From Isurus oxyrinchus (taxonomy: Eukaryota), in the NCBI GenBank assembly GCA_026770705.1, contig JANJGN010000926.1, positions 186,001-234,696 of the forward strand: a stretch of DNA of 48,696 bases. The letters are read 5' to 3'. A program made the position numbers and the translations under genes. Numbering within the stretch: the first letter of the stretch is position 1; every line of letters starts with the position of its first letter. Below the pieces are notes generated by a model. It saw nothing but the letters and a program-made list of their open reading frames with translations, was not told the origin of the DNA and searched no databases. Positions 346-35,857 of the stretch are shown one piece after another.

Positions 346-1614
346 GGACAGTGTGAGGGGTGGAAGGTGTAGTGGGGAGGAGACTCTTCACTCAGGGGGG
401 AGGTGTCATCACCCCTCAGCTCGGTTTACGTTACAGCTATGATGTGGATTCAATCACACACAATAAGCTCATGGATCTGGGAGCAGAAATAGGCAAATCA
501 TTAAAAATAGTGACGCTGGTTAACACGACCAAAAAACAAGCAAATCAAACACTATTATTTCCCATTGAGTGTTGGATGTGAATTGTTGAGTAATTATAAC
601 ACAGCACTTACCAGAAACGTGAAGCTGGGTTACAGGGTAATAGTTATGGCTCGGACGATTGCCAAATTTTATCGTGAAAAGATAATGTCCTGCATCTTCC
701 CGTCTGATGTTGTTTATAATCAGGGAACAGTCACCATCTTTCAGGTCTCCAGACAGCCAGGTCCGATGGTGGAACTGTGATAACTCGCGACTGTGACCCT
801 TGGAGTGAAAGGCTATAGACCATTTAGACCATTTGTTCCGTATGTATCTTCTCATTTTCCAGATTCAGACCTGTGGTTTCTTTACCAAATCTGATGGATA
901 ACTGTAATGACATGGTATCTGTACACACGAACCTTCCTGCGCTGTCACCTCTCGTGGAGTATCACCTTTCCACTCTTGTGACAATCCAACTGGGGAGAGA
1001 AATATCAATATTTAACTCTGGATGTTTTGTTGATTCACTAAGCTCGATATCCACCCCCTCCATCACTCGGGCACAGTGGCTGCAGTGTGGACCATCTACA
1101 GGACACACAATGAACTCCACAAGGTATCAAACCAGATGGAAGAGAATCCTGGACACAAAAGCGGAAAAGTTCATTCTACATTGGTTCATGGTCCTCAGGA
1201 CCCTGTTTGTGCAGAAGCCTGTTCTCCAACAGAACTGAAGTTGGGGACAATGCATTTGGAATTCCACTGTCCGGGGCATTGGGTTAACTTGCTGAGTTTG
1301 TTTTAAATCTAACATCTATTTTTGGTCTGTTGCCTTAAAGGGAGTGTAACTGGGAGTCAGGTTAATTAGGAATTTTAGGAGTTATTATAGCAGTCATTGT
1401 AGTCTTATGTATGTGCTTAAAATCTTTTATTTTGATGACAAATATTTTAATTTATTTTTTTAACTCTCTAAAGGTCTTGGTGTAATTATTGCTTCTGAAT
1501 TCAGTGCACACATCTCATAATAAATACAAATTGCAAAATCATGATGATCGTGTGACCACCTTTCTCTCATGGACTTGGTCTGCCTGGCACACATCACCTG
1601 CCAAGTGATAACAC

Positions 1615-5330: not shown

Positions 5331-6758
5331 AAGAGTTACTGATGTGGGGCTTAATTTATCAGATTGTAGAATGATCCGGAAATGAAGGATGCCATTTGGC
5401 CCATCGAGCCTGTGCTGGGCCTTTGAAAGATCTGTCCAATTATTCCCACTCTCACCTCTGCTCTCTCCTCCACAGCCCTGCAAAATGTCCCCTTCAAGTA
5501 TTTATCTAGTTCCCCTTCTGAAAGTTCCTGTTGAATCTGCTTCCACCGCCCTTTCAGGCAGTGAGTCAATGGTCTCTCTCTGAGCTGCAAAGTGCTAATG
5601 TTCTGAGAACTTTAAACTCTGCAGCAGATCAGAAACAATCATGATAACTCAGAATATTTGACAGCTTTACACACAGACAGCTTTGCCTTCCTTCTCTCTT
5701 TCAGTTATCTTGCTCCCTTATTGAAGTATCTAGCAAGGTGAGAATGGACAGGAAGTGTGACACTGAACAGCCTGTCTATTCTAGGAGCTGCTGTGTTGTC
5801 TTCATGGGAAATTCTGACTAAAATCAGCAATAGACACAAAATTTCAGGGCATTGTTATCCGAGTCCCAGCATCAGGATAGACCTCATCCCCCAGTTGGTA
5901 TTCCTGATTCTCTATTCAGCTGATCACTCCCCTGTCACTGGCTGAACTACACTGACTCCCAGTCCAGCAATGACTCAAATTTCAAATTCTCATCATTGAT
6001 TTCTTACCCCACCATCCCCCCTCTACACTCTCTATCTGTGTAACCTCCTCCAACCCTAAATCCCTCTGAGATCTCTGCACTCCTCCAATTCTACTGTCAG
6101 ACAGGGAGTCAGTGTATATCAGTGAGCACAGGGGTGATGGGTGAATGGGACTTGGTGTGAGTTTGTACACTGGCTCACTGCTGAATCGGTTGCCAATCAC
6201 ACTCAATAAGAATGATCTTTTACAAAGACTATTAGCCATAAAACTGTCCGAGCTGACGACGTTATTACCTTGGAGAAGTGACAGGAGGAAGTAGGATTTC
6301 CCGATCATTGTCCACTCCCAGATACTTCATAAGCTTCTGACTCTCAAACTCTGAAAGAAAAAAGAGTTAATGAGACCTCACCTCTTGTCCGACAGCTCTC
6401 AAGAGATCAGAACTGTTTTTGGACAATGTCTTTACAGAGTAATTTGATTCTCTGTGGGATGATAGGTGCTCTGCAGAGAGTTACAAGGCTTTAAGAAATA
6501 AAAACATTGAAGGATTTGCATTTCTATAGCACCTTTCACCACCTCAAGACGTCCCAAAGCTCATGTCTCTGCACTTCCCTCATCCCTTGAGCTAGAAAGA
6601 TGTTCTGTACAACAGACTTGAGTCTCACACCCAGATCTCAATAACCAGTAGAAATCTTTCAAAGGCATCAATCATTGGAATCGGTCTTTATAAAGTCACA
6701 ACATCAACAAAGGACGGTGTTGGTCGTGGAAGTGAATTCCAGTCGTTCCGTTACTTAC

Positions 6759-6899
6759 CCAGGACCTGTCCGACTGCTCGCCTGGGGAGGAACTGCCCAC
6801 ACGCTCTGCTTGGGCTGAATGACCTCTTCCTGTGCTGCTCCCTCTGTGTGTTTAATTAGAAAGGGTGGATGTGTCACTGTGAGACAAAATGAGGAAGTG
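6759..6899 (-). promoter_or_regulatory. Non-coding first exon and promoter of copy A, with PU.1/ETS motif
   Basis: Donor GG|gtaagt at 6759. AAAATGAGGAAGTG at 6886-6899 is conserved at the same place in copies B and C. Confidence 0.6.
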
Positions 6900-8108: not shown

Positions 8109-8821
8109 TTCTGTGCGTGGTCTGCAATGTCCTAAGTGCATTCTAGGCACAGCCCAAGATTCCGCCTGATGTCTGTGTAACAACAACATCATGTACATGT
8201 CGAGAATAATTCTCACTGTGTTGGTGCAGCAAGACAGTTTTGGAATGGCACCACCACTGGCAGGAGTGTGCAGCTGCAATGTGACGTGTTTACATTGAAA
8301 ATTTCCATTATAAAGATGGCCACAGGAATTCATCTGACTGGAAAAAGTGACAACATGAAATAATGTCTTTGAGCCAAGAATCTGGCAGCAAAATAAGAAT
8401 CTTAATCCATAAGTATCTACAGAAAAGGCTGAACATTTTAATCACTTGTGTTAATCAATGTAATTTTATTCATAACCCAAATGCTTCTTACAATCTATCG
8501 CAGCATGAAAAAGGTGCAGCATTCAGAAAGCACATTCCAATCAGAGAACAGAGTTTAGCAACGTCACATTTCTGTTCATTCCTATTCGACCATGTTGGCT
8601 GCACACAGCCAGACAATGCCGTGGTTATGATGTGTCCACACAGCAGGACTGGGGAGCACCAGGTATAAGGAAAAGTTTCAGCTTGCTGAGGAGAAGAAGG
8701 AGAATCTCTCGTTCCAGGTTTCTCTCCGTACATTAAGAAGCAGGCATGCCGATGTTTCATTGCACTCTGTCTGCTGATGGGAGTCCGCTTGGAAATTGCT
8801 GTTTGTGCTGATGGAAAGAAT

Positions 8822-9430
8822 AAGCTTTTCATAAATGGAGGGATTGAGTACAAACACAGGGAGGTTATGCTGAACATTTATAAAGCTCTGGTTAGGTCAC
8901 AGCTAGAGTATTGTGTCCAGTTCTGCTCTCCTCACTTTGGGAAGGAAGTGAGGGTCCTTGAGAGGGTGGGGAGGAGATTGAGCAGAATGGGTCCAGGGAT
9001 GAGGGATTTTAGCTACAAGGTTGGGTTGGAGAAGCTGGGGTTGTTCTCCTTGGAGCAAAGGAGATTGAGGGGGGATCTGATCGAGGTGTACAAGATGATT
9101 ATGGGTTTAGATACGGTAGACAAAGAGAAGCTGTTGCCATTAGCTGATGGGACAAGGACTGGGGGACACAGATTGAAGGTTGTGGGCAGTGGGGGGATGT
9201 GAGGAGGAACTTTTTTACACAGCGAGTGGTAATGAGCTGGAACTCGCTGCCTACGAGGATGGTGGAAGTGGAGACGATGAACGATTTCAAAAGGAAATTG
9301 GATGGACACTTGGAAATAAACATGCTGGGATACGGGGATAGAGCGGGGGAATGGGACTGAGTGGATTGCTCTACACAGAGACAGCATAGACTTAATGGGC
9401 TGAATGGTCTCCTACTGTGCTGGAATGCCT
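8822..9430 (+). mobile_element. CR1-type LINE 3' end (ORF2 C-terminus and 3' UTR)
   Basis: YKALVRSQLEYCVQF.SP...LERV.RR...LEKLGLFSLEQRRLRGDLIEVYK...TGGHRLK; tail gggctgaatggtctcct. Confidence 0.9.
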
Positions 9431-9543
9431 CTCTGATACGAAGGTGATTCTAACCAGGACACTGACCAGTTTCATTACAACTTAACACAACATCACACGT
9501 TATTTGTCCGCACTGACTGACCAGATTCTTGCTTTACAAAGCT

Positions 9544-9683
9544 TCAAACAGTCTGTCGACTTCCTTTCACTGTTTGTCTCTCCCAGACACAGACTCCAGT
9601 GATAGTGATAACCACAGCCACAAGGAATATCACAGCTCGTATTCCCAGGATCAGGATCACATGCAGAATCTCTCCTCCACTGT
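9544..9683 (-). other. Transmembrane/short-tail exon of copy B with intramembrane Arg
   Basis: tttctttctgtgtgttctctag|AC AGT GGA... encodes (H/D)SGGEILHVILILGIRAVIFLVAVVITITGVCVWERQTVKGSRQTV*. Confidence 0.8.
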
Positions 9684-10074
9684 CTAGAGAACACACAGAA
9701 AGAAATCATCACTGACTCTCCGCTTTCAATCTCTCACTCTGGCTGAACAATCAAGCTTCATATCACTGCAACATTTGCTGTAATATTGACCCATCCACTG
9801 GGATTCAATGTGGAATGAATGTTTTCATTGGAAACACTCTAAGAGTGGACAATCGGAACTTTCCCCTTAGCGTGGAACATTGTTGAGAATGGATCATTGT
9901 GCTGTTGGACTCCCTGTCCAATGTTTCTCTCCATCGCTGTGTACAGGATTGTGCTGTAGAAAATTCTGGAAACGTTTAGTGCAGGGTGGAAATCCATCTC
10001 GGACGCGTGTGCGAATCGGGCAGTATCGAGATGGACTCCCCCACGGACTTACACCCCCCGCTTAATAAACAGTT

Positions 10075-10450
10075 CCAATCTTTACCCAGAGAGAGGGGAG
10101 AATGTGGAACTCACTCCCACAGGGAGTGGTTGAGGTGAACAGTATCGATGTATTTAAGGGGCAGGAGGGTCGGTAACCAGAGGGACACAGATTGACCAAC
10201 TGGAGGGGGAGATGAGGAGAATTTGTTTTGACAGAGCGAGTTGTTGTGATCTGGAAGGTGCTGCCTGAAAGGGCGGTGGAAGCAGATTCAATAGGAACTT
10301 TCAAAAGGGAAATTGGATAAACACTTGAAGGAGGAAGATGGGGTAAAGTGGAGTGGTGGTTAGTGGATCTGATTGGATAGAACATTGAAAGACCTGGCAC
10401 AGGCACAATGGGCTGAATGGCCTCCTCCTGTGCTGTATCATTCTCCGCTT
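10075..10450 (+). mobile_element. CR1-type LINE 3' fragments
   Basis: gagttgttgtgatctggaa...gtggaagcagattcaataggaactttcaaaaggg...gggctgaatggcctcctcctgtgctgt, matching the LINE tail at 8822-9430. Confidence 0.75.
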
Positions 10451-13400
10451 CCATGATCTCTCCCCCAGTCAGTAACCATTCCAGATCCCTCTTGAAGGCG
10501 ACAGAGAAACAGGAACTACCACACCCACTGACAGCACATTCTCAAGGATCCCTACTCTTTGGGAAAAGATGAACTCCCCAACATCCAGCCTATTCCTGCT
10601 TCCCAGAGAGTGTAAACCCTTCAGGGAGGCGCTGAGGAAGTTTTCAATAAAATGAATTATCAAATCTATCATTTGAGAAATAATTTAATTCTGATGAACT
10701 CACAGCTTGTGTAGCAAACTGGGAAGTGGAGTTGCTTGAAAAGCTGGGAAACACAAGGATTAAGTGCTACAATGCCACCACTGGTGGGAGACTGTAACTA
10801 CAGTGTGACGTTTACATAGGCAGTCATCATTATAAACAGGGGCATTGGACATACTGGGAAATATGTGCACTGGAAAGGTGAGTAAATGATGTAAGATTTT
10901 CACCAGCAGGAATTCTCTAACTAAACCTCTCCACCTCTCTCTTACTCTCAGATACACAAACAAAATCACACCGAATCAGATAAGGAGGAGTTGGGGCCGG
11001 TGATTGTTCGAAGGGTTAGCTTTCAGGAAGCTTCTTAAAGGGAGAGAGAGAGTTGGAGAGGCAGAGAGTATCTGTGAGTGTCTCTATGCATCTGAGTGTC
11101 TGTAATAGACTTTTTAATTTCCATATTCTTCCATAAATATGATTGGGAACACAAATCCCAGAATCCAGGCCAACTCTCCAGTGCAGTACTCAGGTAAGCC
11201 ACAGGGGAGTGTGTGCTAGTGTGTTTGTTCGTGAGTGTGTCTTTGTAATTGCTCATACATGTGTGTCTGCACGTGTCTATTTAGTTCTGTATATTTGTGT
11301 GTGTTTGTGCAATGTTTGAATCTGAGAGAGATGTTGATGTCTGTGTACACTCACGTTCCACAGTGATGGTTATGAACCCCTCCACTGCTCCATGTTCATT
11401 CTCTGCCACACACTGATAGTCTCCAGTGTCCCGATATGTAATGGGAGGAATCACCAACCACAGCTCATTGTTGGAACTTGTTCTGTTCATTTGGACATTA
11501 AGATGTCAGGGCAGGAATCAAGAAGCCCGTTCGCAGGATTACCAACAGAAAGTGAACCACAATTTATACTTAATGGGAAGAGAGTGCTGATTGGTTGGCA
11601 AGTGGTCTCTGATAGGTGGACGTGTTGCCATGGAGAATGGTGTGTGCGAGATGTAAACTTTAGACAGCTTGTCTCTTTATTCAGCAATAATCAAATAAAG
11701 ATCAATTAACTTCAATCGACTGTGAAGCACTTTGAGAGGTCTGAGAATGTGGACACTGAGAACGGGCTGCACTGTCAGAGGGTCAGCGCTGAGGGAGTGC
11801 TGATGTAGAATGAAAGGTGTATGTACTTACCTTGCACAGTTAGTACGAGGGTCCGCTCCGATGAAACAGATGGATATCTCACTCTGCAGCTGAGTGTGTG
11901 TCCGTGGTGTTTGAGTGATGGGATCAGGGTCAGAACAGAAGTATAGGTCAGAGTGACACCATGCTGAGTTACAGTGTTTGAGACTGATCCAGGTACGTCA
12001 GTGGGAGTTTCCCAGGTTAAGACAGGCGCTGCTGTTCCATTGCACGTTGTGTTGATGGTGCAGCTTACATCCACATGCTTTCCTGCAATAATTTCAGCAG
12101 GGAATATCGTGGGTGTATCTGTGAAATCTAACAGACAGAGAATGGATCCTTTTAGAGAAATATAACGTGAAGCATCAGTTCAAATAGAAACCACAGTCCC
12201 ACAAGAGAAAGCACTTTTACAAGGATGATATCAGAACTGAGAGGTTACAATGATCAGGAGAGATTTTCTTGCTCTTTGGCAGTAGTGTTTCTGTCTCTCA
12301 GCTTAATACACGTTCACTCCGAGACATGTGAATTGAGAACACTGGATGAGAGAAGAGGCTCAGACCAGAGATTGGAGTTCAAAGCAGAATACTGCGGATG
12401 CTGGAAATCTGAAACAAAAACAAAAATTGCTGGAAAGACTCAGCAGGTCTGACAGTATCAGTGGAGAGGAAGCCAGGGTTAACGTTTCGAGTCCGTATGA
12501 CTCTTCATCAGACCAGAGGTTTGAGTTCACTGGCTTCTCATTTCCTCAGTGATCTGGGTGATTTATTACCTTGTGGTTTGTTGGATCTTGCTGTGCACAA
12601 ACTGACTGCTGTGTTTTACATCTGTGACTACAATTCAGGAATAATTTCAATGGCTGTGAAGGGATTTGGATCCTCCTGAGGTGGTAAATTGCGCTGCAGA
12701 AATGCACATCTTTCTTTTATCGATACGTCAGACTTTTAAACAGGACAGGAGAGATTGATGAGAGTGGATAACCTGATAATACAGTTAATGCTTTTCATCA
12801 TTGATATTAAAGTGAGTATTAGACGTTGCTTTAGGACTGAACTGGAAGCTATCACCAGGTTATTGAGAATCAGATAGCAAGTTATAATAAGCTGTGTTTT
12901 GTGTTAATATGTAAACGTCACAGATTGTGTTATCTCCCATTGAGTGTTGAATGTGAATTGTTGAGTAATCATAACACAGCACTTACCAGAAACGTGAAGC
13001 TGGGTTACAGGATAATAGTTGTATCTATTCCTGCTGTCAAATTCTATTCTGAAAAAATAAGGTCCTGCATCTTCCCGTCTGATGTTGTTTATAATCAGGG
13101 AACAGTCGCCATCTTTCAGGTCTCCAGACAGCCTGGTCCGATGGTGGAATCTTTGATCCCTGTGACTGTGACCCTCGGAATGAAAGGCTATAGACCATTT
13201 CGGCTGTGGGTTCCCATCTATTCCTTTCAACCAGATTCCGACACGTGATCTCCCTACGAAATTTGATAAGTAACTGTAATGACATGGAATCTGTACACAC
13301 GAACCTTCCTGCGCTGTCACCTCTCGTGAAGTGTCGCCTTTTCAATCTTGTGACAGTCCAACTGGGGAGAGAAATATCAATATTTAACTCTGGATGGTTT

Positions 13401-14554
13401 GTAGATCCACTAGACTTGATATCCACCCTCTCCATCACTGGGGCACAGTGGCTGCAGTGTGGACCATCTACAGGACACACAAGGAACTCCCCAAGGTTTC
13501 ACAATGGATGGAAGAGAATCCTGGACACAGGAGTGGACAAGTTCATTCTACATTGGCTCATGGTCCTCAGGACCCTGTTTAGTGAAGCCAGTCTTCCACC
13601 CAACACAGAGTCTACAAGATACACAGGGAAACTGTGTAAACATCTCATCTCTCTACACTGACTGGTTTGAGCTTCGGTTTAACTTTCAGTATTTTTAAAT
13701 TTCCATATTGTGGTTGCTATGGTGAAACTGTGCAGGAAGAGTGAGGGCTGGACCCTCTGTCTATTCTCACTGCAGCTGTGATGTGGTCGTGGTGATTCTC
13801 AGTAAAATGAAACCCTCTGAGCTCCTCCATCCCCGAGGTTTAGGGAGTGAATTCCAGAGCTCAGGCCCCAGGCAGCTGAAGGCCCGGCCGCCAGTATTGG
13901 AGTGATGGGAATCGGGGGATGGTCAAGAGGCCAGAATTGCAGTAACACAGAGATCTGGGAAGTTGTTTGGGTGAGTTGCAGGAGGTTACAGAGATAAAGA
14001 GATAAGAATGATCTTTTACAAAGAATATTAACCATAAATCTGTCCGAGCTGATGATGATATTACCTTGGAGAAGTGACAGGATGAAATAAGATTTCCCGA
14101 CCATCGTCCACTCCCAGATATTCCATCCACTTCTCACTCTCAAGCTGTGAAAGAGAAAGGAGTTAATGAGACCTCACCTCTTGTCCGACAGCTCTCGAGA
14201 GATCAGAACTGCTTTTAGACAATGTCTTCACAGATTAATTTGATTCTCTGTGGGATGATAGGTGCTCTGCAGAGAGTTACAAGTCTTTAAGTAAGACAAA
14301 CAATGATTGATTTGCATTTCTATAGCACCTTTCACTATCTCAGGACATCCCAAATCTCATGTCCCTGCACTTCCCTCATCCATTGAGCTAGAAAGATGTT
14401 CTGTACAACAGACTTGAGTCTCACACCCAGAATTCAATAATCAGTAAAAATCTTTCAAAGGCATCAATCATTGGAATCTGTCTTTATAAAGTCACAACAT
14501 CAACAAAGGACGGTGTTGGTGGTGGAAGTGAATTCCAATCGTTCCGTTACTTAC

Positions 14555-14695
14555 CCAGGACCTGTCCGACTGCTCGCCTGGGGAGGAACTGCCCACACGC
14601 TCTGCTTGGGCTGAATGACCTCTTCCTGTGCTGCTCCCTATTTGTGTTTAATTAAAATGGGTGGATGTGTCACTGTGAGTCAAAATGAGGAAGTG
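14555..14695 (-). promoter_or_regulatory. Non-coding first exon and promoter of copy B (AP-1 TGAGTCA adjacent to PU.1/ETS motif)
   Basis: Donor at 14555; TGAGTCA at 14676-14682 followed by AAAATGAGGAAGTG at 14682-14695. Confidence 0.6.
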
Positions 14696-14799
14696 CTTGG
14701 TACCAAGTGAGAAAGCAACTCTTTGCCTCGCACTGTTAGAAAACTGTTAACCCTTTGCGTGCCAATAATGTGGTTGAAGGGCCATCGACTGTTCATATG

Positions 14800-17408: not shown

Positions 17409-17525
17409 TTATAAATTCCCATAAACAGAATCCTTGGCAAAATCACAGTTTGCGTAAAGATCATCATCTGTATCAGGATTGACTCCACGGTTAGATTTCA
17501 TTTCCAGATCCTTCTCATCTTTCTT
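17409..17525 (-). CDS. Orphan terminal cytoplasmic-tail exon with tyrosine motifs (ITIM)
   Basis: catttctgtttctattacag|AAG... encodes KKDEKDLEMKSNRGVNPDTDDDLYANCDFAKDSVYGNL*; minus-strand AATAAA at 16630-16635. Confidence 0.7.
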   Translation of the reverse strand, partial: KKDEKDLEMKSNRGVNPDTDDDLYANCDFAKDSVYGNL

Positions 17526-17662
17526 CTGTAATAGAAACAGAAATGATCAGAGTGACAATCAGAGTGATCAGTGTTTAGTATTATTGATCCAAATCGAAAA
17601 TTCCACCCACAATACATACATTAATTATTGATACTGTTGGATGCTGGTCACGAGTTTGTTGG

Positions 17663-20600
17663 GACTTATGGATCCAGTCTTGTTTTGGAGAGGCTGAGTA
17701 GGTACAATAGACAGAGTAGATCAGCAGACAGTTCTTAGATGAAACACATTCTGCTTATTTACAAAGGAACTCAGCAGCTACACTTGTGTGCTTTCAACTC
17801 AAGCCCTGTCTCCGCATTACAGGCTCTAACCATAGGTGACCGACTACTGAGGTACCTGCGCCACTCGGCTGTTGGACACTGATATAAGAGTTAAACAGGG
17901 ACTTCTATTAGTGAAAACCAAAGGTCAGCAGAATTCTCCAGGTGAACCTTGTGCACCATGGGGCTGACATCAGCAGAACTCTCCAGAAAGGCCTTGAAGA
18001 TCACAAGGGATTAACTCGAGAAGAGACATAAAGAGATGCTGAGGGTAAACAGATCAGGTAAAGGCAAACAGCACCAGGCTAGAACGAGATAAACAGCTCT
18101 TGCTTGGGTAAGGAGCAGATATATACCTGGGACTGGGAACATCTGCTTATTATGTGATTATGTACTGACAAGATTTGAATTTAAATAACCCAATGTGTAC
18201 GTGACTAACTCTGTGAACAAAAAAGATGGTTTCCCTGTAATGGGTAGAGTTCTGTTTTTAGCCAGGCCTGAGGTTGATTCTGAGAACACACCACAACACT
18301 GAGCTCATGTTATCTTCCATTGTAACCTTCTTCTTAAAGGTATATCACACATCAGATTACCACCACCCTCCCCCTTTACTCAGAAACACATTTTACACTT
18401 ACTTTTACCATTTTCTCAAAGTATCAGATGATTTACACAGATCAGTAATTTACAAATTCAGTCTTTCTGGGGGGTTTCCTTATGCGTCTGGAACGTCTCA
18501 GATCCACAGCTTCAGATGCTTTGTCAGGAGTCTCCTTTTCTGATGTTGTCCCAACACCAGCTTCTTCGGTGGACACCTGCAAACCTGTTTCCTCAACTCT
18601 TGCAGGTACAACGGACCCTTCAGACACATCTGTTCTCAGCTGAGTTCTTTCAACAGGAGACATAGACACAGCCGTGAAGACTGGTGGGGTTGTTTCTTGG
18701 TACTTTGTTTCTCTCCTCCTTATATGACCCACATGTCTCCATATGACTCGGTCTTCCACTTTCACATGGTGAGAAAGAGTTCCAATCGCTGCATTTATTT
18801 CACCCGGTGACCACTTTGGCCCTTCTCTAAAATCGTTCACATATACCGTCTCTCCTACGGTCAGCTTCCTGTCATGGCTATGCCAGTCATGTCCAGTTTC
18901 CTGTCTTCCTGGACTCCTTTCCACCTTCCCGCTGACATTTAGCATGACTGATGTTGCAAATGTGACGTGAGAAAAAACTTTTTCACACAACTAAGTTTTG
19001 GGCCTGGAATGCACGGCCTGGACGTGTTGTGGAGGCAGGTTCAATCGAGGCATTCAGGAGGGCATTAGATGGTTATTTGGATAGAGAAAAGGTGCAGGGG
19101 CATGGGGAAAGGCAGGGCAATGACACTAGGTCATGATGCTCATTTGGAGAGCTGGGATAGACATGATGGGCTGAATGGCCTCCTGCTGTGCCATTAAGAC
19201 ACTGTGATCCTGCAGAGGAGACTCTGAAAGGCAAACCGGTTTATTGATACAACCCTTTGTGTGTATTAATTGTGACAAACTTCTGGGAGGCCTTCTCGAA
19301 CTCCAATTGTTGATAAGCATGGCTCATATCAGCTCCGTGTAGGCCGTTCCAGTCAATTCTTGTCATCTCCACAAACACTTTGGCCAGGCTCAGGTCCAGG
19401 GACTATTGGTGCTGCCCATTCTGAGGACAGCACAGATTGTATCACTCCCAGTTTCTAGAACCTGCCCAATTCAGCATCTGCCTTTTCCCACATTGCATAA
19501 GGTACTGGTCGTGCCTTCATAAATCAGAGGGGTAGAGTCTGGATCCACATGAATTTTTGCTTGCAGCCCCTGGATCTCCCCGAGTTCATCTTGGAAAACT
19601 GAGATGTATTTTTGTAGTAGCTCAGGTAGCCCACTGGCTCTCAGTTGGAAGATCTCAGACCAATCCAGCTTAATATCTTTCAGCCAGTTTCGTCCAAGGA
19701 GGCTTGGTCCCTCACCAGCTCCCATCATCAAGGGTCATTTTACTGATTGACTTCCATACTGTATAATAACCCTGCTTATGTCTTTGGCTTGAATGTCTTC
19801 TCCCGTGTAAGTTTTCAATTAGTCATCTGTTTCTTCCAAATTTAATTGACTTTCCCCATGATTCCAGTATTTGAAAGTATGCTCCCCAATTAGCGTAGTG
19901 TTAGCTCCTGTGTCCACCCCCATTCTGAGAGCTCTATCATTCACCCTCACTGTTACATAGATTGGCTCTGTTCTTCCTACCTTTAAATTATACAATGAAT
20001 AACTATCTGAATCTGTTACTTCAGGCTCTTCTATGTTATGGATCTCACAGGGTTTTCTCTCTTGATTGAAACTCTGCCTGATTCTATCCTTGCAATCTCT
20101 CATGGGCTCTCTGTTTCGATGACAGTAAAAACAATTGATTTTTTTAAAGTTCCATTCACTACGAGGTTGTCTGCTTCACCTCTGTTCCCATTATTCCATG
20201 TTTTCTCTGCTAAGTCATTCCTTTTTATTTGCTGCTAGTGGTGGAGGTTTCCCGTTTCTCATCAGAGCTGTACATTTTCCCGCACTTCTTGGCTGAGGCT
20301 CCTCACCCAACATGAGGACGGTGACATTTTGCACTCTCCATATGTTTTTCGAGTCCCTCACTGCTCTTTCCATAGCCAGCACTATTCCCAGCGCCTTCTG
20401 AATATCCAAATCTGTTTCAGACAGTAATCTCTTCTGAATCACATCTTCATTTATACTGCACACCAGTCGATCTCTCAGCATATCATTTATAGATTTACCA
20501 AACCCACAATGTCCTGTTAACTGTTTCAGAATTTCCACATAACATGCAGCTGCCTCCCCTGGGACTCTATTTCTTGAGTTAAATTTGGACCGTTGCATCG

Positions 20601-21005
20601 TTACCGAGGGCTGGGGCTGGGAAGGAATCTTCACAAGGTTCACAAGATCATCTAAACTTTTTGAATCCATGGCACCGGGTGGCATTAAAGTTCGCATCAA
20701 TCCCTAAGTCTTACTCCCACACGTGGATAAGAGGGTCGCTCGCCTCTTCTCCTCCCCATCAATGTCATTCACTTGGAAAAAGAATGCGAGAGGTTCACCA
20801 TAATGAGACCAATCGCCCACCGTTGGGTCGAAAGGATCAACTCTTCCAAACTGCAGCATTCTTCGAGGGGACTGCTTCGGTTATTAGGATGGAAATTATA
20901 TTTATAATCACTGTGCGAGGCACGGCCAGATTTCAATTCGCTTGCTTTCATTCCTTGCTTTTTCTTCCTTGTTTTTCACCTCATCACCAGTTTATTCAAC
21001 CCTTG
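17663..21005 (-). mobile_element. Degenerate Ty3/Gypsy retrotransposon (gag, protease, RT start, integrase C-terminus, PPT, 3' LTR)
   Basis: Gag MLRDRLVCSINEDVIQKRLL; protease VDTGA; GPSLLGRNWL; integrase tail RRSRRIRKPP; PPT AGTAAAGGGGGAGGG at ~18366-18380; large internal deletion. Confidence 0.85.
17870..18298. mobile_element. Solo LTR nested in the Gypsy 3' LTR
   Basis: 429-bp block with inverted termini TGTTG...CAACA interrupting the LTR; no clean target-site duplication seen. Confidence 0.5.
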
Positions 21006-21908: not shown

Positions 21909-22048
21909 ACTTCCTCATTTTGTCTCACAGAGACACATCAACCCTTTCTAATTAAATACACAGAGGGAGCAGCACAGGAAGAGGTCATTCAGCCCAAGCA
22001 GAGCGTGTGGGCAGTTCCACCCCAGGCGAGCAGTCGGACAGGTCCTGG
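21909..22048 (+). promoter_or_regulatory. Promoter (PU.1/ETS motif) and non-coding first exon of copy C
   Basis: ACTTCCTCATTTT at 21909-21921; donor GG|gtaag at 22048; inverted near-copy of 6759-6899. Confidence 0.6.
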
Positions 22049-22492
22049 GTAAGAAACGGAACGATTGGAATTCACTTCCACCACCAACACCGTCCTTTGT
22101 TGATGTTGTGACTTTATAAAGACAGATTCCAATGATTGATGCCTTTGAAAGATTTCTACTGATTATTGAGATCTGGGTGTGAGGCTCAAGTCTGTTGTAC
22201 AGAACATCTTTCTAGCTCAAGGGATGAGGGAAGTGCAGAGACATGAGCTTTGGGACATCCTGAGGTGGTGAAAGGTGCTAAAGAAATGCAAGTTCATCGT
22301 TGTTTTTCTTCCTTAAAGCCTTGTAACTCTCTACAGAGCACCTATCATCCCACAGAGAGTCAAATTAGGTCTGTGAAGACATTGTCTAAAAGCAGTTCTG
22401 ATCTCTCGAGAGCTGTCGGACAAGAGGTGAGGTCTCATTAACTCCTTTCTCTATCACAGTTTGAGAGCGAATGAAATACCTGAGAGTGGACG

Positions 22493-22532
22493 ATGATCGG
22501 GAAATCTTACTTCCTCCTGTCTCTTCTCCAAG
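22493..22532 (+). CDS. Siglec-like copy C, signal-peptide exon
   Basis: MIGKSYFLLSLLQ + G|gtaata; acceptor at 22459; phase 1. Confidence 0.8.
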
Positions 22533-23455
22533 GTAATATCATCGTCAACTTGGACAGATTTATGGTTAATAGTGTTTGTATAAGACCATTCTTATTGAGC
22601 TCTGATAGGAAACCGATTCAGCAGTGTGCCAGTGTACAAACTCACACCAAGTCCCATTCACCCATCACCCCTGTGCTCACTGATATACACTGACTCCCTG
22701 TCTGACAGCAGAATTGGAGGAGTGCAGAGATCACAGAGGGTTGTAGGTTTGGAGGGGGTTACAGAGACAGGGAGTGTAGCGGAGTAATGGAGGGATTGGA
22801 AATCAAGTGTAAAAATAATCACATCGAGGCATTGCTGGACTGGGAGCCAGTGTAGGTCATCGAGTCACTTGTGGGGTCGGGGTGGAGGTTTGGGGAGGTG
22901 AAAGTTTGAGTAGAAAATCGGACGCAAAATTCAGGGGATGAAGTCTAACTTGATGCTGAGGGTCTGACAGCAATGGCCTGAAATTAGTGTCTTTTGCTGA
23001 TTTTAGTCAGAATTTCCCATGAAGACAACACAGCAGCTCCTAGAATAGACAGGCTGTTCAGTGTCACACTTCCTGTCCATTCTCACCTTGCTAGATACTT
23101 CAATAAGGGAGCAAGATAACTGAAAGAGAGAAGGAAGGTAAAGCTGTCCGTGTGTAAAGGGGTCAATATTCAGTTTGTATATTTGTCTTTGCTCTTGACA
23201 CATGCAGAGCTCAGGCTAGAGGCGCTTTGTTAGTGTGTTTCACAGTGTCTGCTGGAGTAGGGTCAGTGCTGAGCTTGGGGACAAGTCAGTCTACAATGCT
23301 GCATCGGAATCAACAATACAACAATATGGGGTTTCGATCAGAAATAATCCATTAGACAATGAGGATCCAAAGAGATTCCTTAGACAATGAAGTGACAATG
23401 AAGATTCAGTTGACATTGAGGATCCAGAATTAAATATAGATATTTCTCTCCCCAG

Positions 23456-23824
23456 TTGGACTGTCACAAGAGTGGAAAGGTGACACTCCACAAGAGGTGA
23501 CAGCGCAGGAAGGTTCGTGTGTACAGATTCCGTGTCATTACAGTTATCCAGCACATTTGGAAAGCCAACCACGAGTCGGAATCTGGTTTAATAACGAGAA
23601 ACACAAATTCGACAATCCCTTTGCCTTTCACTCCAAGGATCACAGTCACGAGTTACCAAGGTTCCGCCATCGGACCCAGCTGTCTGGAGACCTGAAAGAT
23701 GGCGACTGTTCCCTGATTATAAACAACATCAGACGGGAAGATGCAGGACCTTATTTTTTCAGAATAGAATTTGGAAGTACAAATAACTACAACTATTACC
23801 CTGTAACCCGGCTTCACATTTCTG
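23456..23824 (+). CDS. Siglec-like copy C, V-set Ig exon (intact, essential Arg present)
   Basis: 369-nt phase-1 exon VGLSQEWKGDTPQEVTAQEGSCVQIPCHYSYP...GIW...RTQLSGDLKDGDCSLIINNIRREDAGPYFFRIEFGSTNNYNY; Cys pattern fits the Siglec B-E intra-sheet disulfide. Confidence 0.92.
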
Positions 23825-24750
23825 GTAAGTGCTGTGTTATAATTACTCAACAATTCACATCCAACACTCAATGGGAAATAACACAAACTGTGACGTTTAC
23901 ATATTAACACAAAACAAAGCTTATTGTAACACACTGTCTGATTCTCAATAACCTGCTGATAGCTTCCAGTTCAGTCCTAAAGCAACCTCTAATACTCACT
24001 TTAATATCAATGATTAAATAGATTGAGTGTGTCCATCAGTGTTATCAGGTTATCCAATCTTATCAAGCTCTCTAATCCTGTTTTAAATTCCCACAAATTG
24101 ACAACAGAATGACTTGCATTCCTATAGCGCCTTTCACCACATCAGGACGATCCTTAATCGATTCACAGCCAATGAAGTGATTCTTGAAGCACACATTCTC
24201 TCCACTCTCTGGGTAAAGAAGTTTCTCCTGAATTCCCCATTGGAGTTATTAGTGAGGATCTTATATTGTCAGCCTCTGGTTTTGTTCATTTGTTCCATGT
24301 CTACTCGATCAAAACCTTTCACTACTTGAAAGATCAAATGAGGTCACCCCTCAACCTTCTCTGTTCACGGGAACAGAGACCCAGCCTGTTCAGCCTCTCC
24401 TGATAGGTAAAGCCTCACATTGCTGAGATCATCCTTGTGAAGCTTTTTACCACCCTCTCCAGTGTCTCTATATCCTTTTCCAAATGCTGAGTCTGTTCTC
24501 CCCTAGCTGTGAGCTGTTCCTCCACCCTCACCCAGTCTGGTCAAATCAAGGGTCACTGAGTGAGAGTGTATTAATCTGAGTGACAGAGATTCAACAAGTG
24601 TAAAAAGAGACAATTCTAAAATGATCATTGTAACCTCTCAGTTCTGATATCATCCTTGTAAAAGTGCTTTCTCTTGTGGGACTGTGATTTCTATTTGAAC
24701 TGATGCTTCACGTTATATTTCTCTAAAAGGATCCATTCTCTGTCTGTTAG

Positions 24751-25047
24751 ATTTCACAGATAAACCCACGATATTCCCTGCTGAAATTATTGCAGGAAAG
24801 CGTGTGGATGTAAGCTGCACCTTCAACACAACGTGCAATGGAACAGCAGCACCTGTCTTAACCTGGGACACTCCCACTGACGTACCTGGATCAGTCTCAA
24901 ACACTGTAACTCAGCATGGTGTCACTCTGACCTATACTTCTGTTCTGACCCTGATCCCATCACTCAAACACCACGGACACACTCTCAGCTGCAGAGTGAG
25001 ATATCCATCTGTTTCATCGAAGCGGACCCTCGTACTGACTGTGCTAT
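24751..25047 (+). CDS. Siglec-like copy C, C2-set Ig exon
   Basis: 297-nt phase-1 exon DFTDKPTIFPAEIIAGKRVDVSCTFNTTCNGTAAPVLTW...TSVLTLIPSLKHHGHTLSCRVRY; extra Cys for the interdomain bond. Confidence 0.9.
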
Positions 25048-25214
25048 GTAAGTACAAACACCCTTCATTCTACATTAGCAGGAATAGTATCAAATGTGCA
25101 CAGCAAGCTCCCACATACTGCACTTTGTTTATAAACAAACCATTGGTGTTTAACTAGTAAAAAGTGAGCCCTGACAGGCAGTACATCCTTACTACTGACT
25201 CTCCGACAGTGCAT

Positions 25215-26950
25215 CATGGACTCATAGACTCATAGACACTTACAGGACAGAAGGAGGCCATTTAGCCCATCTTGTCCATTCTGGTCAGCAACTCCCTCCC
25301 TAAGTGCATCACCTCACATTTTTCCAGGTTGAAGTCCATTTGCGTCGTGATCATTCCCCCTATATTTACGTCCAATTCATTTATATACACCACAAACAGC
25401 AAGTGCCCCAGCACTGAGCCCTGTGGAACCCCACTGGAAACAGACATCCAGTCACAGAAACATCCCTCCACCATCACCCTCTGCTTCCTGCCTCAGCCAA
25501 TATTGGATCCAACGTGCCACTTTGCCTTGGATCCCATGGGCTCTTACTTTCTTGGCCTCTCTGCCAAGAGGCACCTGATCAAAAGCCTTCCTCAGCCCAT
25601 GTCGACCACATCAAAGGCATTACTCTCATCAACACTCCTGGTTACCTCCTCAAAAGATTTGATCAGGTTTGTCAAACATGACCTTCCCTTAACAAATCCA
25701 TGCTGAATATCCCAGATTAATCCTTGTCTCTCCCAGTGCAGATTCATTCTGTCCTTCAGAATTCTTACTAGTAACTTCCCCACCACCGAGGTTAGACTGA
25801 CTGGCCTGTAATTTCCTGATCTATCCCTTCCTCCCTTTTTTAATAATGGGACAACATCAGCCATCCTCCAGTCCTCTGGCACCTCACCTGTGGCCAGAGA
25901 GGATTTGAAAATTACTGCCAGGGCCCCTGATATCTCTTCCCTTTCCTCCCTCAACAGCTTTGGATTCATCTCATCTGGGCTTGTGGATTTATCCACTTTT
26001 CAGGCCACTAAACCCACTAGTACCTCCTCTCTCTGTGTTAATTTCCTCTCATATTTCACTGTCCTCCACCCTGATGTTATACCTGCATCATCCTTTTCCA
26101 TTGTGAAGACTGATGCAAAGTATTCATTGAGGACTGTACCCACGTCTTCCAGGTCCACACACACATTACCTCGATAGTCCCTAATCGGCCCCACTCTTTA
26201 CCGAGTTATTCTCCTGTTCTTTACATATTTAAAAAACCCCTCTGGGTTTTGCTTTATTCTACCCACCAGTGCTTTCTCATGCACTCGCTTATCTTTCCTA
26301 ATGTCCTTTTTCAGTTCCCCTCTGCACTATTTGTACACCTCTAGGGACTCTGCTGTATTGAGCCCTCAGTATCTGCCATAAGCTTCTCTTTTTTCTCAAT
26401 CCTAACCTTTACGTTCCTTTTCTTCCAGGGTTCTCCAGACTTGGTCTCCCTCTTTGTCTTTACAGGAAGATATCTGCTCTGTACTCTCGCTATTCCCTCC
26501 TTGAATGCCTCCCACTGCTCTGACACAGTTTTATCTGCAAAGAGCTTCTCCCAGTCCACTTGGGCCCAATCATATCTCATCTTAGTAAAATTAGCCTTTC
26601 CCCAGTTTAGAATTTTTATTCCCAGCACAAACTTATCCTTCTCCATAACTGTCCTAAATCCAATTGAGTTACAGTCACTATCTCCCCTACTGATACGCTT
26701 TCCACCTTTCCCTGCGCTTTTCCATATATTAGGTCCAGAACTGTCCCCTCCCTTGTTGAGCTTTCTATGCACAGACTAAAAATCTTCTCCTGGATGCAAC
26801 TTCAGAATTTTTCTCCCTCCCTACCTTGCTCACTAAAGCTGTCCCAATTAATATTTGGGTAGTTAAAATCCCTGAGTATTACTGCTTTATTATTCTTACA
26901 CATCTCTGAAATGTGATCACATGTTGGATTGTCCATCTCTCCCTGACTGT
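25215..26950 (-). mobile_element. CR1-type LINE ORF2, degenerate with internal deletions
   Basis: NYRPVSLTSVVGKLL...QHGFVKGRSCLTNL; VSSGVPQGSVLG.LLFVVYIN; LNEYFASVFT; tail aatggcctccttctgtcctgtaag with tctatgag repeats. Confidence 0.92.
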
Positions 26951-33989: not shown

Positions 33990-34490
33990 AAGGGGCTGAA
34001 TGGCCTCCACCTGTTCCTGTGTAACGGGCATCAGTGGCTGAATGGGCCTCGTCCTTTTTCTGTGTAACAGGCTCAATGGGGCTGAATGGGCCTCCTCCTG
34101 TTCTTGTCTAACAGGCTCGAGGGGGCTGAATGGGCCTCCTCCAGTTCCTGTGTAACAGGCTTGAGGAGCTAAATGGGCCTCCTTCCGTTCCTGTGTAACA
34201 GACATCAGTGGCTGAATGGGCTTGCTCCTGTTCCTGTGTAACAGTCTTGAGGGGGCTGAATGGCCTCTTCCTGTATCTGTGTAACAGGCTCAATGGGCTG
34301 AATGGCCCCCTTCTGTTCCTGTGTAACAGTCTCGAGGGGGCTGAATGGGCCTCTTCCTGTTCCTGTGTAACAGGCTCGACGGGCTGAATGGCCTCCTCCT
34401 GTTCCTGTGTAACAGGCTTGAGGGGGCTGAATGGCCTCCTCCTGTTCCTGTGTAACAGGCTCAAGGGGCTGAATGGCCTCCTTCTGCTCT
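33990..34490. repeat. ~43-bp LINE-tail-derived minisatellite, same family as 14800-16075
   Basis: About 12 units of gggctgaatggcctcctcctgttcctgtgtaacaggctc. Confidence 0.9.
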
Positions 34491-34714
34491 GTAAACTTGT
34501 TGTGATACTGTAACTGCCTCTTTGGTTTCATTCAGCTGAATCTTCAGCTCTTCAGTCTCTTCCTTGTATCTCTTGCCTTCCTCCTGGAACATTGGACATG
34601 GTTGGGTCTTCCCTGCCAACTGTTTCTTCAGTTTGCTCAGAGCGGCACAGAATTCGCTTTCTTTCTCTTCAGGATTTTCCAGTGGAACCAACTCTGACCT
34701 GAGGGACACTTGCA

Positions 34715-35857
34715 GCCTGTGAGGATGCTTCAATTCTTCAAACTCATTCCGAGATACACTCTCATATTCCCCCAGCAACTCAGCAACTCCTCCAGTGAAA
34801 CATTTCAGAGCAGCTGAGCTTGGTTTTCTGGAACCAGTCTCGGCCCAGAAGACTAGGGCCCTCACCTGTCGCTATGATCACTGGAAGCTGGGCTGTCTGC
34901 TGCCTGTAGGACACAGGTACTGGGACCAGGTCCTTTCCCTGTATGGATTCTCCAGTGTGTGTCTTCAGCTGATCCATTGTTGGCTCTAAATTCAGCGTCT
35001 GGGTTCCTTCATTTAGCTGTTTAAATGTGGGCTCTTCCACCACTGTGTCTGAGGCTCCCGTATCTGCCCCATTACTAGTGGCTGCCCATTCACTTGGGTT
35101 GTGATGGTTATAGGTTCAGTTTTTACCACTGTGACATTGGACAGGGAATAGACATCGGTATCAGCAGCTTCAGGCTCTGTGATATTATTCACTTCCATCA
35201 TGTTGGTGCACTGTCTGATGGGCTGTCTCGATTTCACCCTGCATTGCTTTATTACCCGCCCCTTTCTTGTGGCAGTGATGGCATTCTGCCCCCTTGAACC
35301 TGCAGGTGTCCGGTACGAGCTCACCCCCCCCACATCGAGAACAGACCAACTTCGGAGTTGCTGCTGAAATACTCCCACAAAGCCTTTTAGTTTCTGGAGC
35401 GGCAGAGACTGTCTCTCGCTTGGCGGCTGTCTCTCTCTCTCTCTCTCTCACTCCAGTTTGAGCCTCACGCCCGGTGGTTGGTTCCTGTCCCAGCTGAGGA
35501 CTGGTGCCATGTTGTACATCCTGTAAATCCCGCCAGTCTCTCCCAGCACTTTCCATGCCTGGCGCTATTTCCATAGTGCGCTTCAAATCGATGTCGGCTT
35601 CTGCGAGTAAACGGCTCTGAATGGCGTTGGGGTGAACGACACAAACCAATCGGCCCCGCAACATGTCATTGAGTGTGTCTCCGAGGTCCCAGTGCTCAGT
35701 CACCTGCTTCCACTTCACTGTATAGGTTGCGATGGACTCTCCCTGGGCCCTTACTCTGGAGTTAAACTTAAACCTCTGCATTATTACCCACGGCTTCAGC
35801 TGAAAACACATCTTCATGAGGTCGACTAATTGGTGAAAAGATTTAGAATTGGGTGCA
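34715..35857 (-). mobile_element. Gypsy gag-protease fragment, same family as 17663-21005
   Basis: VIMQRFKFNSRVRAQGES...MLRGRLVC; CSRCGG...CRFKGAECHHCHKKG; EPEAADTDVYSL; GEGPSLLGRDW. Confidence 0.85.

What the first reader, a model, noticed from the sequence alone, without database searches (positions are those of the whole stretch)
9544..9683. Transmembrane exon with intramembrane arginine (ILILGIRAVIFLVAVV): activating-receptor signature
A strong polypyrimidine acceptor opens a phase-1 frame of ~25 hydrophobic residues interrupted by one Arg in the outer third, followed by ERQTVKGSRQTV*. This placement resembles Siglec-14 (Arg, DAP12) and FcR-gamma-coupled receptors. The exon is in frame with both the third-Ig donor and the C2 donor, so exon skipping would give a two-domain V-C2-TM form.
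Basis: partly seen in the sequence, partly recalled or inferred. Interest (0 to 1): 0.8.

Follow-up and report, generated by a model that had tools for sequence, protein, structure and literature searches.

The report
Shark Siglec arginine-anchor exon, dead gene
This is a genuine copy of a conserved shark exon that gives Siglec-like immune receptors a membrane anchor with a buried arginine and a very short tail, the usual build of an activating receptor, but the gene it closes here carries a premature stop and is probably a pseudogene.

Summary
On the minus strand, window 9683..9544 is a phase-1 terminal exon behind a strong acceptor. It reads a 29-residue hydrophobic stretch with one Arg (codon 9639..9637), then a 12-residue tyrosine-free tail and a stop. 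It is not chance: the 45-residue peptide alone finds 8 shark Ig-receptor proteins among 1.84 billion (best E 3e-13). Among 105 stored proteins, 16 end in this cassette. Closest are great white shark proteins (42 of 45 identical). The two-domain V-C2-TM form is the annotated form in relatives. A C2-donor-to-TM-exon joint appears in contigs of 4 of 4 runs, though these contigs may come from paralogues. This copy looks dead: the V exon has an in-frame TGA where two paralogues read TGG, and the "third Ig" exon is only a 3' half. The adaptor is unknown. The scan has already noted this cassette several times on other DNA of this genome, and public automatic annotation holds it. It is ordinary for a paired-receptor family.

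The parts
9544..9683 (-). Terminal exon. It holds 2 bases of a split codon, 45 codons (stalk SGGE, TM with Arg, 12-residue tail) and the stop TGA at 9546..9544.
   Evidence: HMMER E 3e-13 to shark proteins that end in the same cassette. 42 of 45 residues identical to Carcharodon P0017/P0018.
9637..9639 (-). CGA codon of the intramembrane arginine (residue 15 of the exon peptide).
   Evidence: The column is R in 17 of 17 aligned rows, 15 of them distinct. A motif-free phmmer finds the same 16 proteins.
9684..9710 (-). Polypyrimidine tract and AG acceptor of the TM exon.
   Evidence: Read. The joint 9683<->11831 with GT..AG ends on the minus strand appears in contigs of 4 of 4 runs.
11356..11505 (-). 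Remnant of a third Ig exon, 3' half only (E-F-G strands), with a phase-1 donor after 11355. It is skipped in the observed joint.
   Evidence: Pfam I-set positions 50-90 of 90 only. There are stops upstream in all three frames. tblastn with P0022 matches only residues 280-329 of its 236-329 domain.
11831..12127 (-). C2-set exon, open, with phase-1 acceptor and donor.
   Evidence: Pfam C2-set_2 E 3.4e-9. 92-96% identical to Carcharodon and Cetorhinus proteins.
12987..13361 (-). V-set (Siglec-type) exon with an in-frame TGA at 13344..13342. It keeps the YFFR sialic-acid motif.
   Evidence: Pfam V-set E 2.5e-12 and Ig_CD22 E 1.7e-9. DNA alignment with paralogues B and C, which read GAG TGG where A reads GAT TGA. 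Translation.
14065..14104 (-). Leader exon coding part (MVGKSYFILSLLQ plus 1 base), with donor GT at 14064..14063.
   Evidence: The same leader type is seen in P0011, P0012 and P0022.

Best explanation
Window 9683..9544 (minus strand) is a true copy of a conserved 'activating' membrane cassette of galeoid sharks. The cassette is one terminal exon that supplies a short stalk, a transmembrane helix with a single arginine about one third of the way in from the outside, and a 12-residue tail without signalling motifs.

In intact relatives this exon is spliced directly to the C2 exon (or to further Ig exons) of Siglec-like receptors. From the general rule for immunoreceptors, I infer that the arginine pairs with an acidic residue in the membrane span of a separate ITAM-bearing adaptor chain. 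On that reading, ligand binding would activate the cell, whereas sister genes with a neutral anchor and ITIM/ITSM tails would inhibit it.

The copy in this window closes a gene made of leader, V, C2, an Ig3 remnant and TM. That gene has a premature stop six codons into its V exon and only half of its third Ig exon. It is most likely a young pseudogene whose TM exon is still undamaged.

Shown here: exon anatomy, homology, conservation of the Arg, the damage to the gene, and the existence of the C2-to-TM splice in transcript-like contigs. Inferred: adaptor pairing, the activating function, and that the spliced contigs include or exclude this copy.
For: - Exon anatomy and frame.
- Homology of the exon searched alone: 9 hits at E<=1e-3 among 1.84e9 proteins. 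8 of the 9 are shark Ig receptors that end in the cassette.
- Of 105 stored proteins, 16 match the exon at E<=6.8e-11 and 16 of 16 have the Arg. The core ILGIRA-IF is invariant in 17 of 17 rows.
- These proteins have tails of 6-17 residues and no ITIM match, apart from one odd model, P0099.
- Sister proteins with neutral TMs carry tails of 55-194 residues, many with ITIM/ITSM matches.
- The V-C2-TM architecture with the junction residue predicted by the window's donor (G+AC = Asp) is seen in P0001, P0011 and P0020.
- The joint 9683<->11831 appears in 4 of 4 runs, and the joint 12127<->12987 in 1 of 4.
- Damage to this copy.
- The general rule for stimulatory receptors comes from passages of PMC3031540. 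The Siglec-14/DAP12 pairing comes from passages of PMC4042635.
Against: - The spliced contigs were laid at 90% likeness or more, with only 23-31 letters on the short side. A tandem V-V joint in the same output shows that contigs of paralogues are among those laid. Expression of this copy is therefore not shown.
- Unspliced contigs crossing 9683, nearly identical to the window, also exist (records 2, 9, 18). The runs are only guessed to be RNA.
- The TGA rests on one assembly. I could not see reads at 13342..13347, because 197 rows of differences were not shown.
- The TM exon shows no decay at all: the frame is open, the stop is at the same place as in 5 relatives, and identity is 93%. This fits a live gene as well as a young pseudogene.
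- No adaptor was examined. One paper reported that no FcR-gamma was found in the shark data of 2014 (PMC4016189).
Confidence: 0.75

Rival explanations
1. The gene is alive. The TGA in the V exon is an assembly error, a null allele of one haplotype, or is bypassed, for example by use of another V exon as in the tandem V-V relatives. Gene A would then make a working V-C2-TM activating receptor.
For: - The TM, C2 and leader exons are fully open, with intact splice sites.
- The TM exon is 93% identical to the great white shark proteins and stops at the same place.
- The C2-to-TM joint is present in 4 of 4 runs.
- Tandem V-V proteins exist (P0014, P0017, P0018), and a V-V joint was seen.
Against: - The stop lies in a stretch that is otherwise conserved with two paralogues, which read GAG TGG.
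- A second lesion, the half Ig3 exon, is in the same gene.
- No protein identical to these exons came back from the protein searches.
- A neighbouring copy, gene C, also has its own stop, so pseudogenes are common in this cluster.
Confidence: 0.2
2. The arginine is drift in a dead exon. This is the reader's own refuting case: intact relatives would have a neutral residue there.
For: The host gene is damaged.
Against: 16 of 16 homologous cassettes in annotated proteins of 8 shark species keep Arg, inside the most conserved block of the exon. The neutral TMs of sister proteins are a different, non-homologous sequence type (E>=0.095).
Confidence: 0.02
3. It is a chance open frame in an intron or intergenic DNA, not an exon.
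For: None beyond the small size of the exon (140 bases).
Against: E 3e-13 to C-termini of annotated proteins. The splice joint falls exactly at 9683. There is a strong acceptor. The stop position is conserved.
Confidence: 0.01

Closest known systems
Automatically annotated shark Siglec-like proteins that end in the same cassette. Examples: Carcharodon carcharias P0017/P0018 ('Siglec-12', accession not looked up), P0020 ('CD33-like'), Scyliorhinus canicula P0011/P0012, and S. torazame XP_072325011.1.
   Same: The same terminal exon: 78-93% identical, with the ILGIRA core and the Arg, a short tail, and in 5 of them the same stop after RQTV/RQPV. The same V-C2-TM build and the same junction residue.
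   Different: Those models are open from leader to stop. The window's gene has a TGA in its V exon and an Ig3 remnant in the C2-TM intron.
Human Siglec-14 (activating) paired with Siglec-5 (inhibitory). Source: PMC4042635, passages read.
   Same: A Siglec-type V-C2 ectodomain. An activating partner without ITIM that relies on a separate ITAM adaptor. Sister genes with similar ectodomains and ITIM tails. That Siglec-14 uses an Arg is recalled and comes from no call.
   Different: No orthology was shown. The best solved-structure matches of the relative P0020 are CD33 (1e-26), MAG (1.8e-24) and Siglec-5 (1.6e-23), and no tree was built. TM homology to Siglec-14 was not tested. The adaptor in sharks is unknown.
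Siglec-15, which has a TM lysine, couples to DAP12/DAP10 and is conserved from fish to mammals. Source: PMC7226832, passages read.
   Same: An activating Siglec whose coupling depends on a basic TM residue.
   Different: It uses Lys, not Arg. It is a single conserved gene rather than a cassette shared by an expanded cluster. It is a weaker match for P0020 (8.4e-11).
Skate MDIRs, a cartilaginous-fish multigene family of activating and inhibitory Ig receptors. Source: PMC3031540, passages read.
   Same: It shows that the activating/inhibitory paired build is already described in cartilaginous fish.
   Different: The ectodomain family is different (CD300/TREM/pIgR-like). No sequence comparison was made here.

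Membership tests
Adaptor-coupled (activating) Ig-superfamily immunoreceptor | Single-pass TM helix with one basic residue inside the hydrophobic core | tested here: met
   R15 lies within the 29-residue hydrophobic run. The best 19-mer has a Kyte-Doolittle mean of 2.95.
Adaptor-coupled (activating) Ig-superfamily immunoreceptor | Short cytoplasmic tail without tyrosine motifs | tested here: met
   The tail is 12 residues, ERQTVKGSRQTV, with no Tyr. The cassette-bearing relatives have no ITIM or ITSM match.
Adaptor-coupled (activating) Ig-superfamily immunoreceptor | Basic residue conserved among homologues | tested here: met
   16 of 16 cassette proteins keep it, and the column is R in 17 of 17 aligned rows.
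Adaptor-coupled (activating) Ig-superfamily immunoreceptor | Inhibitory counterparts with a related ectodomain, a neutral TM and an ITIM tail | tested here: met
   Examples are P0021, P0022, P0026, P0029 and P0044, with neutral TMs, tails of 59-111 residues and ITIM/ITSM matches. An ITIM-like terminal exon lies in the window at 17528..17412.
Adaptor-coupled (activating) Ig-superfamily immunoreceptor | Physical association with an ITAM adaptor through a TM acidic residue | not testable with these tools
   This needs co-expression and co-precipitation. No adaptor sequence was available to me.
Adaptor-coupled (activating) Ig-superfamily immunoreceptor | Open reading frame from leader to stop in this copy | tested here: not met
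   There is a TGA at 13344..13342 in the V exon. The third Ig exon is truncated.
Siglec family (I-type lectins) | N-terminal V-set domain of the Siglec/CD22 type | tested here: met
   Pfam V-set 2.5e-12 and Ig_CD22 (PF24518) 1.7e-9 on the V exon alone.
Siglec family (I-type lectins) | Essential arginine of the sialic-acid site (F-strand YFFR motif) | tested here: met
   The V exon reads GPYFFRIEF. In the relative P0020 the same string aligns with the YFFR of solved CD33 chains. That this Arg is the sialic-acid contact is recalled knowledge.
Siglec family (I-type lectins) | C2-set domain(s) after the V domain | tested here: met
   Pfam C2-set_2 3.4e-9.
Siglec family (I-type lectins) | Binding of sialylated glycans | not testable with these tools
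   This needs a glycan-binding assay of an intact paralogue.
CD33-related Siglec subgroup / orthologue of Siglec-14 | Orthology by tree and synteny with the mammalian CD33-related cluster | not tested
   I have only similarity ranks (CD33 > MAG > Siglec-5). The source names are automatic. I do not file it as a CD33-related Siglec.

The most novel reading that the evidence does not exclude
The Arg cassette is a mobile signalling module. One terminal exon, kept almost unchanged across lamniform, carcharhiniform and orectolobiform sharks, has been attached by exon shuffling to at least four different ectodomain families: Siglec-like V-C2, CD22-like multi-Ig, a single-V sialoadhesin-like form, and SLAM-like. 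A whole set of unrelated shark receptors would then feed one adaptor chain. Dead copies such as this one would be the litter, and perhaps the donors for gene conversion, of that process. The invariant ILGIRA-IF face would be the adaptor contact.
Probability: 0.4. Interest if true: 0.6.

Novelty: new member of a known kind. Interest (0 to 1): 0.3.

Why it matters
For this exon alone it matters little. It is one more copy, probably a dead one, of a cassette that public annotation already contains and that this scan has noted several times on other DNA of the same genome.

The family behind it is of moderate interest:
- A paper on fish Siglecs states that fish genomes lack CD33-related Siglecs. 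It does not mention sharks (PMC7226832, passages).
- A 2014 survey found no FcR-gamma in shark data (PMC4016189, passages).
- My searches of the held library listed no paper on activating Siglec-like receptors of sharks.

Paired activating and inhibitory Siglec-like clusters in sharks, with a conserved Arg anchor, would push this regulatory design back to early jawed vertebrates. They would also give a clean system for asking which adaptor is the ancestral partner.

Tried and rejected
- I looked for a second copy of the TM exon in the window by tblastn and blastn and found none.
- The search for homologous proteins on the cassette region of P0001 and P0002 gave only 3 and 2 hits because of its length window. 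The wider set came from a whole-protein query with P0012.
No dN/dS was done, and none is claimed.
- I considered that the half Ig3 exon could be a frameshifted full exon. tblastn with P0022 finds nothing of the first 44 residues of that domain upstream, so I read it as truncated.
- I considered assigning an adaptor (DAP12 or FcR-gamma) from the position of the Arg. I rejected this as not decidable from sequence, and I had no adaptor sequence from any tool.
- P0008, the 9th HMMER hit, is a repeat protein that matches only the tail piece of the query. I dropped it as spurious.
- P0099 carries the cassette at residue 54 of an odd model. It is kept in the Arg count but not in the tail statistics.
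- Literature: I saw only search listings. I read passages (find mode) of PMC4016189, PMC3031540, PMC7226832 and PMC4042635. Supplementary files were not opened. Those of PMC4016189 (which shark data were screened) and PMC7226832 may bear on the claims of absence.
Every exon was translated and searched on its own.

Full report
WHAT IS THERE. The finding's coordinates hold an exon on the minus strand. Behind a long pyrimidine tract and an AG (…tttctttctgtgtgttctctAG), the exon starts at 9683. Two bases complete a split codon. The frame then reads SGGEILHVILILGIRAVIFLVAVVITITGVCVWERQTVKGSRQTV and stops at TGA 9546..9544. The hydrophobic run is 29 residues long (I5 to W33), with a best 19-mer Kyte-Doolittle mean of 2.95. 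Its only strongly charged residue is R15, codon CGA at 9639..9637. This is the seventh residue of the best 21-residue core, about one third of the way in from the outside. The tail has 12 residues and no tyrosine. Open TM-like 25-mers are rare in the window. There are 31 in six frames, 28 of them inside low-complexity arrays, and this exon is one of 3 elsewhere. The window holds no second copy of the exon.

THE GENE IT CLOSES. All parts lie upstream on the same strand.
- A leader exon at 14104..14065 reads MVGKSYFILSLLQ plus one base.
- A V exon lies at 13361..12987.
- A C2 exon lies at 12127..11831.
- A piece of a third Ig exon ends at 11355.

Each exon was translated and searched on its own, and I built no joined model. 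The V exon hits Pfam V-set (2.5e-12) and the Siglec/CD22 first-domain family Ig_CD22 (1.7e-9). The C2 exon hits C2-set_2 (3.4e-9). The V exon keeps the YFFR motif. In the relative P0020 the same string aligns with the YFFR of solved CD33 structures. With the C2 donor the junction codon is G+AC, which is Asp.

THE COPY IS DAMAGED. Six codons into the V exon, gene A reads GAT TGA. Two paralogous V exons in the window (23.4 kb on the plus strand, 0.8 kb on the minus strand) read GAG TGG there, within otherwise near-identical sequence. The translation is GLSQD*KGD…. The 'third Ig' is only a 3' half. It matches I-set profile positions 50-90 of 90, and stops precede it in all three frames. A full-length relative, Cetorhinus P0022, aligns only with residues 280-329 of its 236-329 domain, and nothing of the first 44 residues is found upstream. 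The neighbouring gene C has a stop of its own, so dead copies are common in this cluster. The leader, C2 and TM exons of gene A are undamaged.

IS THE ARGININE CONSERVED?
- The 45-residue peptide alone was scored against 1,835,955,588 proteins. It gave 9 hits at E<=1e-3.
- Eight of these are shark Ig-domain receptors whose C-terminus is this cassette, with a best E of 3e-13. The ninth is a repeat protein that matches only the tail piece, and I dropped it.
- Their sources name Scyliorhinus torazame, Chiloscyllium punctatum, Hemiscyllium ocellatum, Rhincodon typus and Mustelus asterias.
- A whole-protein search with the S. canicula relative P0012 added 95 elasmobranch Siglec-like proteins.
- Among all 105 stored proteins, a motif-free phmmer with the window's peptide finds 16 cassette proteins at E<=6.8e-11. 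All 16 have the arginine.
- In the alignment of 17 rows (15 distinct) the block I-L-G-I-R-A, then I and F two and three places on, is invariant. Flanking columns vary. The rows were picked with a motif, but one search finds the same 16 without it.
- The next-best match is a stingray protein (P0093, E 0.017) with a different short-tailed TM that also holds an Arg.
- All further matches (E>=0.095) are neutral TMs of another sequence type. These are followed by tails of 55-194 residues, many with ITIM/ITSM matches.

The Arg is therefore ancestral and conserved, not drift. The species with the cassette belong to Lamniformes, Carcharhiniformes and Orectolobiformes. No squalomorph, Heterodontus or batoid protein in my set had the cassette, but sampling is thin.

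WHICH SPECIES, WHICH FORM. The nearest proteins are from the great white shark. P0017 and P0018 share 42 of 45 residues of the TM exon, and P0020 shares 40 of 45. The C2 exons are 92-96% identical. The window is therefore from a lamniform or a close relative. P0020, P0011, P0012 and P0001 are V-C2-TM proteins, and three of them (P0020, P0011, P0001) have Asp at the junction, as the window's donor predicts.

READS. No listed run is on record as RNA; the label is a guess. I laid Logan contigs of four runs on 9300..13700 at 90% likeness or more. Runs X1-X3 are one sample of organism A, and X5 is organism B.
- All 4 runs have a contig joining 11831 to 9683, skipping 2147 bases with GT..AG ends on the minus strand. 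This is the C2 donor joined to the TM acceptor, passing over the Ig3 remnant.
- One of the 4 runs has the V-to-C2 joint 12987 to 12127.
- These contigs can come from paralogues. The short side of each joint is 23-31 letters. One contig joins a V-exon end back to a V-exon start, which is the tandem V-V build of other family members.
- Contigs that run unspliced across 9683 and are nearly identical to the window also exist (2 other letters in 310).

So the splice is real in the family, but transcription and splicing of this copy are not shown. I could not see the reads at the TGA.

HOW IT MOST LIKELY WORKS. The anatomy and its conservation are shown. From the established rule, I infer that in intact family members the arginine pairs with an acidic residue in the membrane span of a separate ITAM adaptor, and that the receptor activates. 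The rule is that stimulatory Ig-superfamily receptors have short tails and a positive TM residue that recruits an ITAM adaptor, while inhibitory ones have long ITIM tails (passages of PMC3031540). The Siglec-5/Siglec-14 pair with DAP12 is an example (passages of PMC4042635). Sister genes with neutral anchors and ITIM tails would inhibit. Which adaptor is used cannot be read from the sequence. A 2014 survey found no FcR-gamma in shark data (PMC4016189). For the copy in this window the most likely state is a young pseudogene with an intact last exon (0.75). A live or polymorphic gene remains possible (0.2).

WHAT IT IS LIKE, AND WHAT IT IS. It works like an activating paired receptor of the Siglec-14 or Siglec-15 kind. 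It is a member of the Siglec family by domain criteria. I do not file it as a CD33-related Siglec or as an orthologue of Siglec-14. Only similarity ranks are available (CD33 1e-26, MAG 1.8e-24, Siglec-5 1.6e-23 for P0020), and the names in the databases are automatic.

THE CASSETTE ELSEWHERE. The same exon ends proteins with other ectodomains:
- CD22-like multi-Ig proteins (P0004, P0005, P0010);
- a single-V sialoadhesin-like protein (P0006);
- two SLAM-like or unnamed two-Ig proteins (P0007, P0009);
- a pIgR-like model (P0013).

This suggests exon shuffling of a signalling module.

NOVELTY AND SCORE. The build is a known kind. The cassette is already present, unremarked, in public automatic annotation of several sharks. 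This scan has noted and followed up the same cassette on other DNA of this genome, including another dead copy. My eight literature searches listed no paper on it. As a single exon in a probably dead gene it is ordinary, so interest is 0.3. The family-level question (shark paired Siglec-like receptors, a shared Arg module, and the identity of the adaptor) is worth more.

Noticed in passing
window 613..990 (minus), leader 6270..6308 (minus): A second Siglec-like copy, gene C. Its V exon has its own in-frame TGA (VGIW reads V*IW) and reads T instead of R in the YFFR sialic-acid motif. Its leader, MIGKSYFLLSLLQ, is intact and identical to that of Cetorhinus P0022.
   Followed up: partly
window 22303..25080 (plus): Gene B has a leader block and open V and C2 exons, 83-91% identical in DNA to gene A. 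The paralogy ends about 30 bases past the C2 donor, and RT-like ORFs follow. No Ig3 or TM exon for it lies in the window.
   Followed up: partly
window 17412..17528 (minus): A terminal-exon-like piece, 82% identical to the C-terminus of the inhibitory Cetorhinus P0022, with two tyrosine motifs (…LYANC…, …SVYGNL). It lies upstream of gene A's leader and belongs to no V/C2 exons in the right order.
   Followed up: partly
window 14516..14719 (minus), 6735..6845 (minus), 21956..22087 (plus): A piece resembling a cytoplasmic exon (residues about 360-404 of P0022) occurs three times, each a few hundred bases upstream of a leader copy. It seems to be part of the duplication unit of the cluster. Its origin is unexplained.
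   Followed up: no
window 1366..1440 (plus): An open, neutral TM-like segment (mean hydropathy 2.62) on the plus strand outside low-complexity DNA. It may be the TM exon of a plus-strand gene that starts before the window.
   Followed up: no
window 12987 / 13360 (read laying, run X1): A contig joins the end of a V exon back to the start of a V exon with one other letter between. This is the tandem V-V architecture seen in P0014, P0017 and P0018, so contigs of paralogues are among those laid.
   Followed up: partly
window 35843..36178 (minus): An open V-like exon of another type: Pfam V-set only at E 0.017, and 28-31% identical to the Siglec-like V domains.
   Followed up: no
window 8777..9202 (plus), 18442..20700 (minus), 25592..26772 (minus), 34461..35868 (minus): ORFs that look retroelement-derived (RT-like, gag/protease-like) are scattered among the receptor genes. 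One lies within about 350 bases downstream of the TM exon's stop. The first AATAAA after the stop is about 1.07 kb away, at 8470. The ORFs were named from their look only and were not searched.
   Followed up: no
P0093 (Hypanus sabinus, stored protein): A stingray Siglec-like protein has a different short-tailed TM (11-residue tail) that also carries an Arg. It may be a batoid counterpart of the shark cassette.
   Followed up: no
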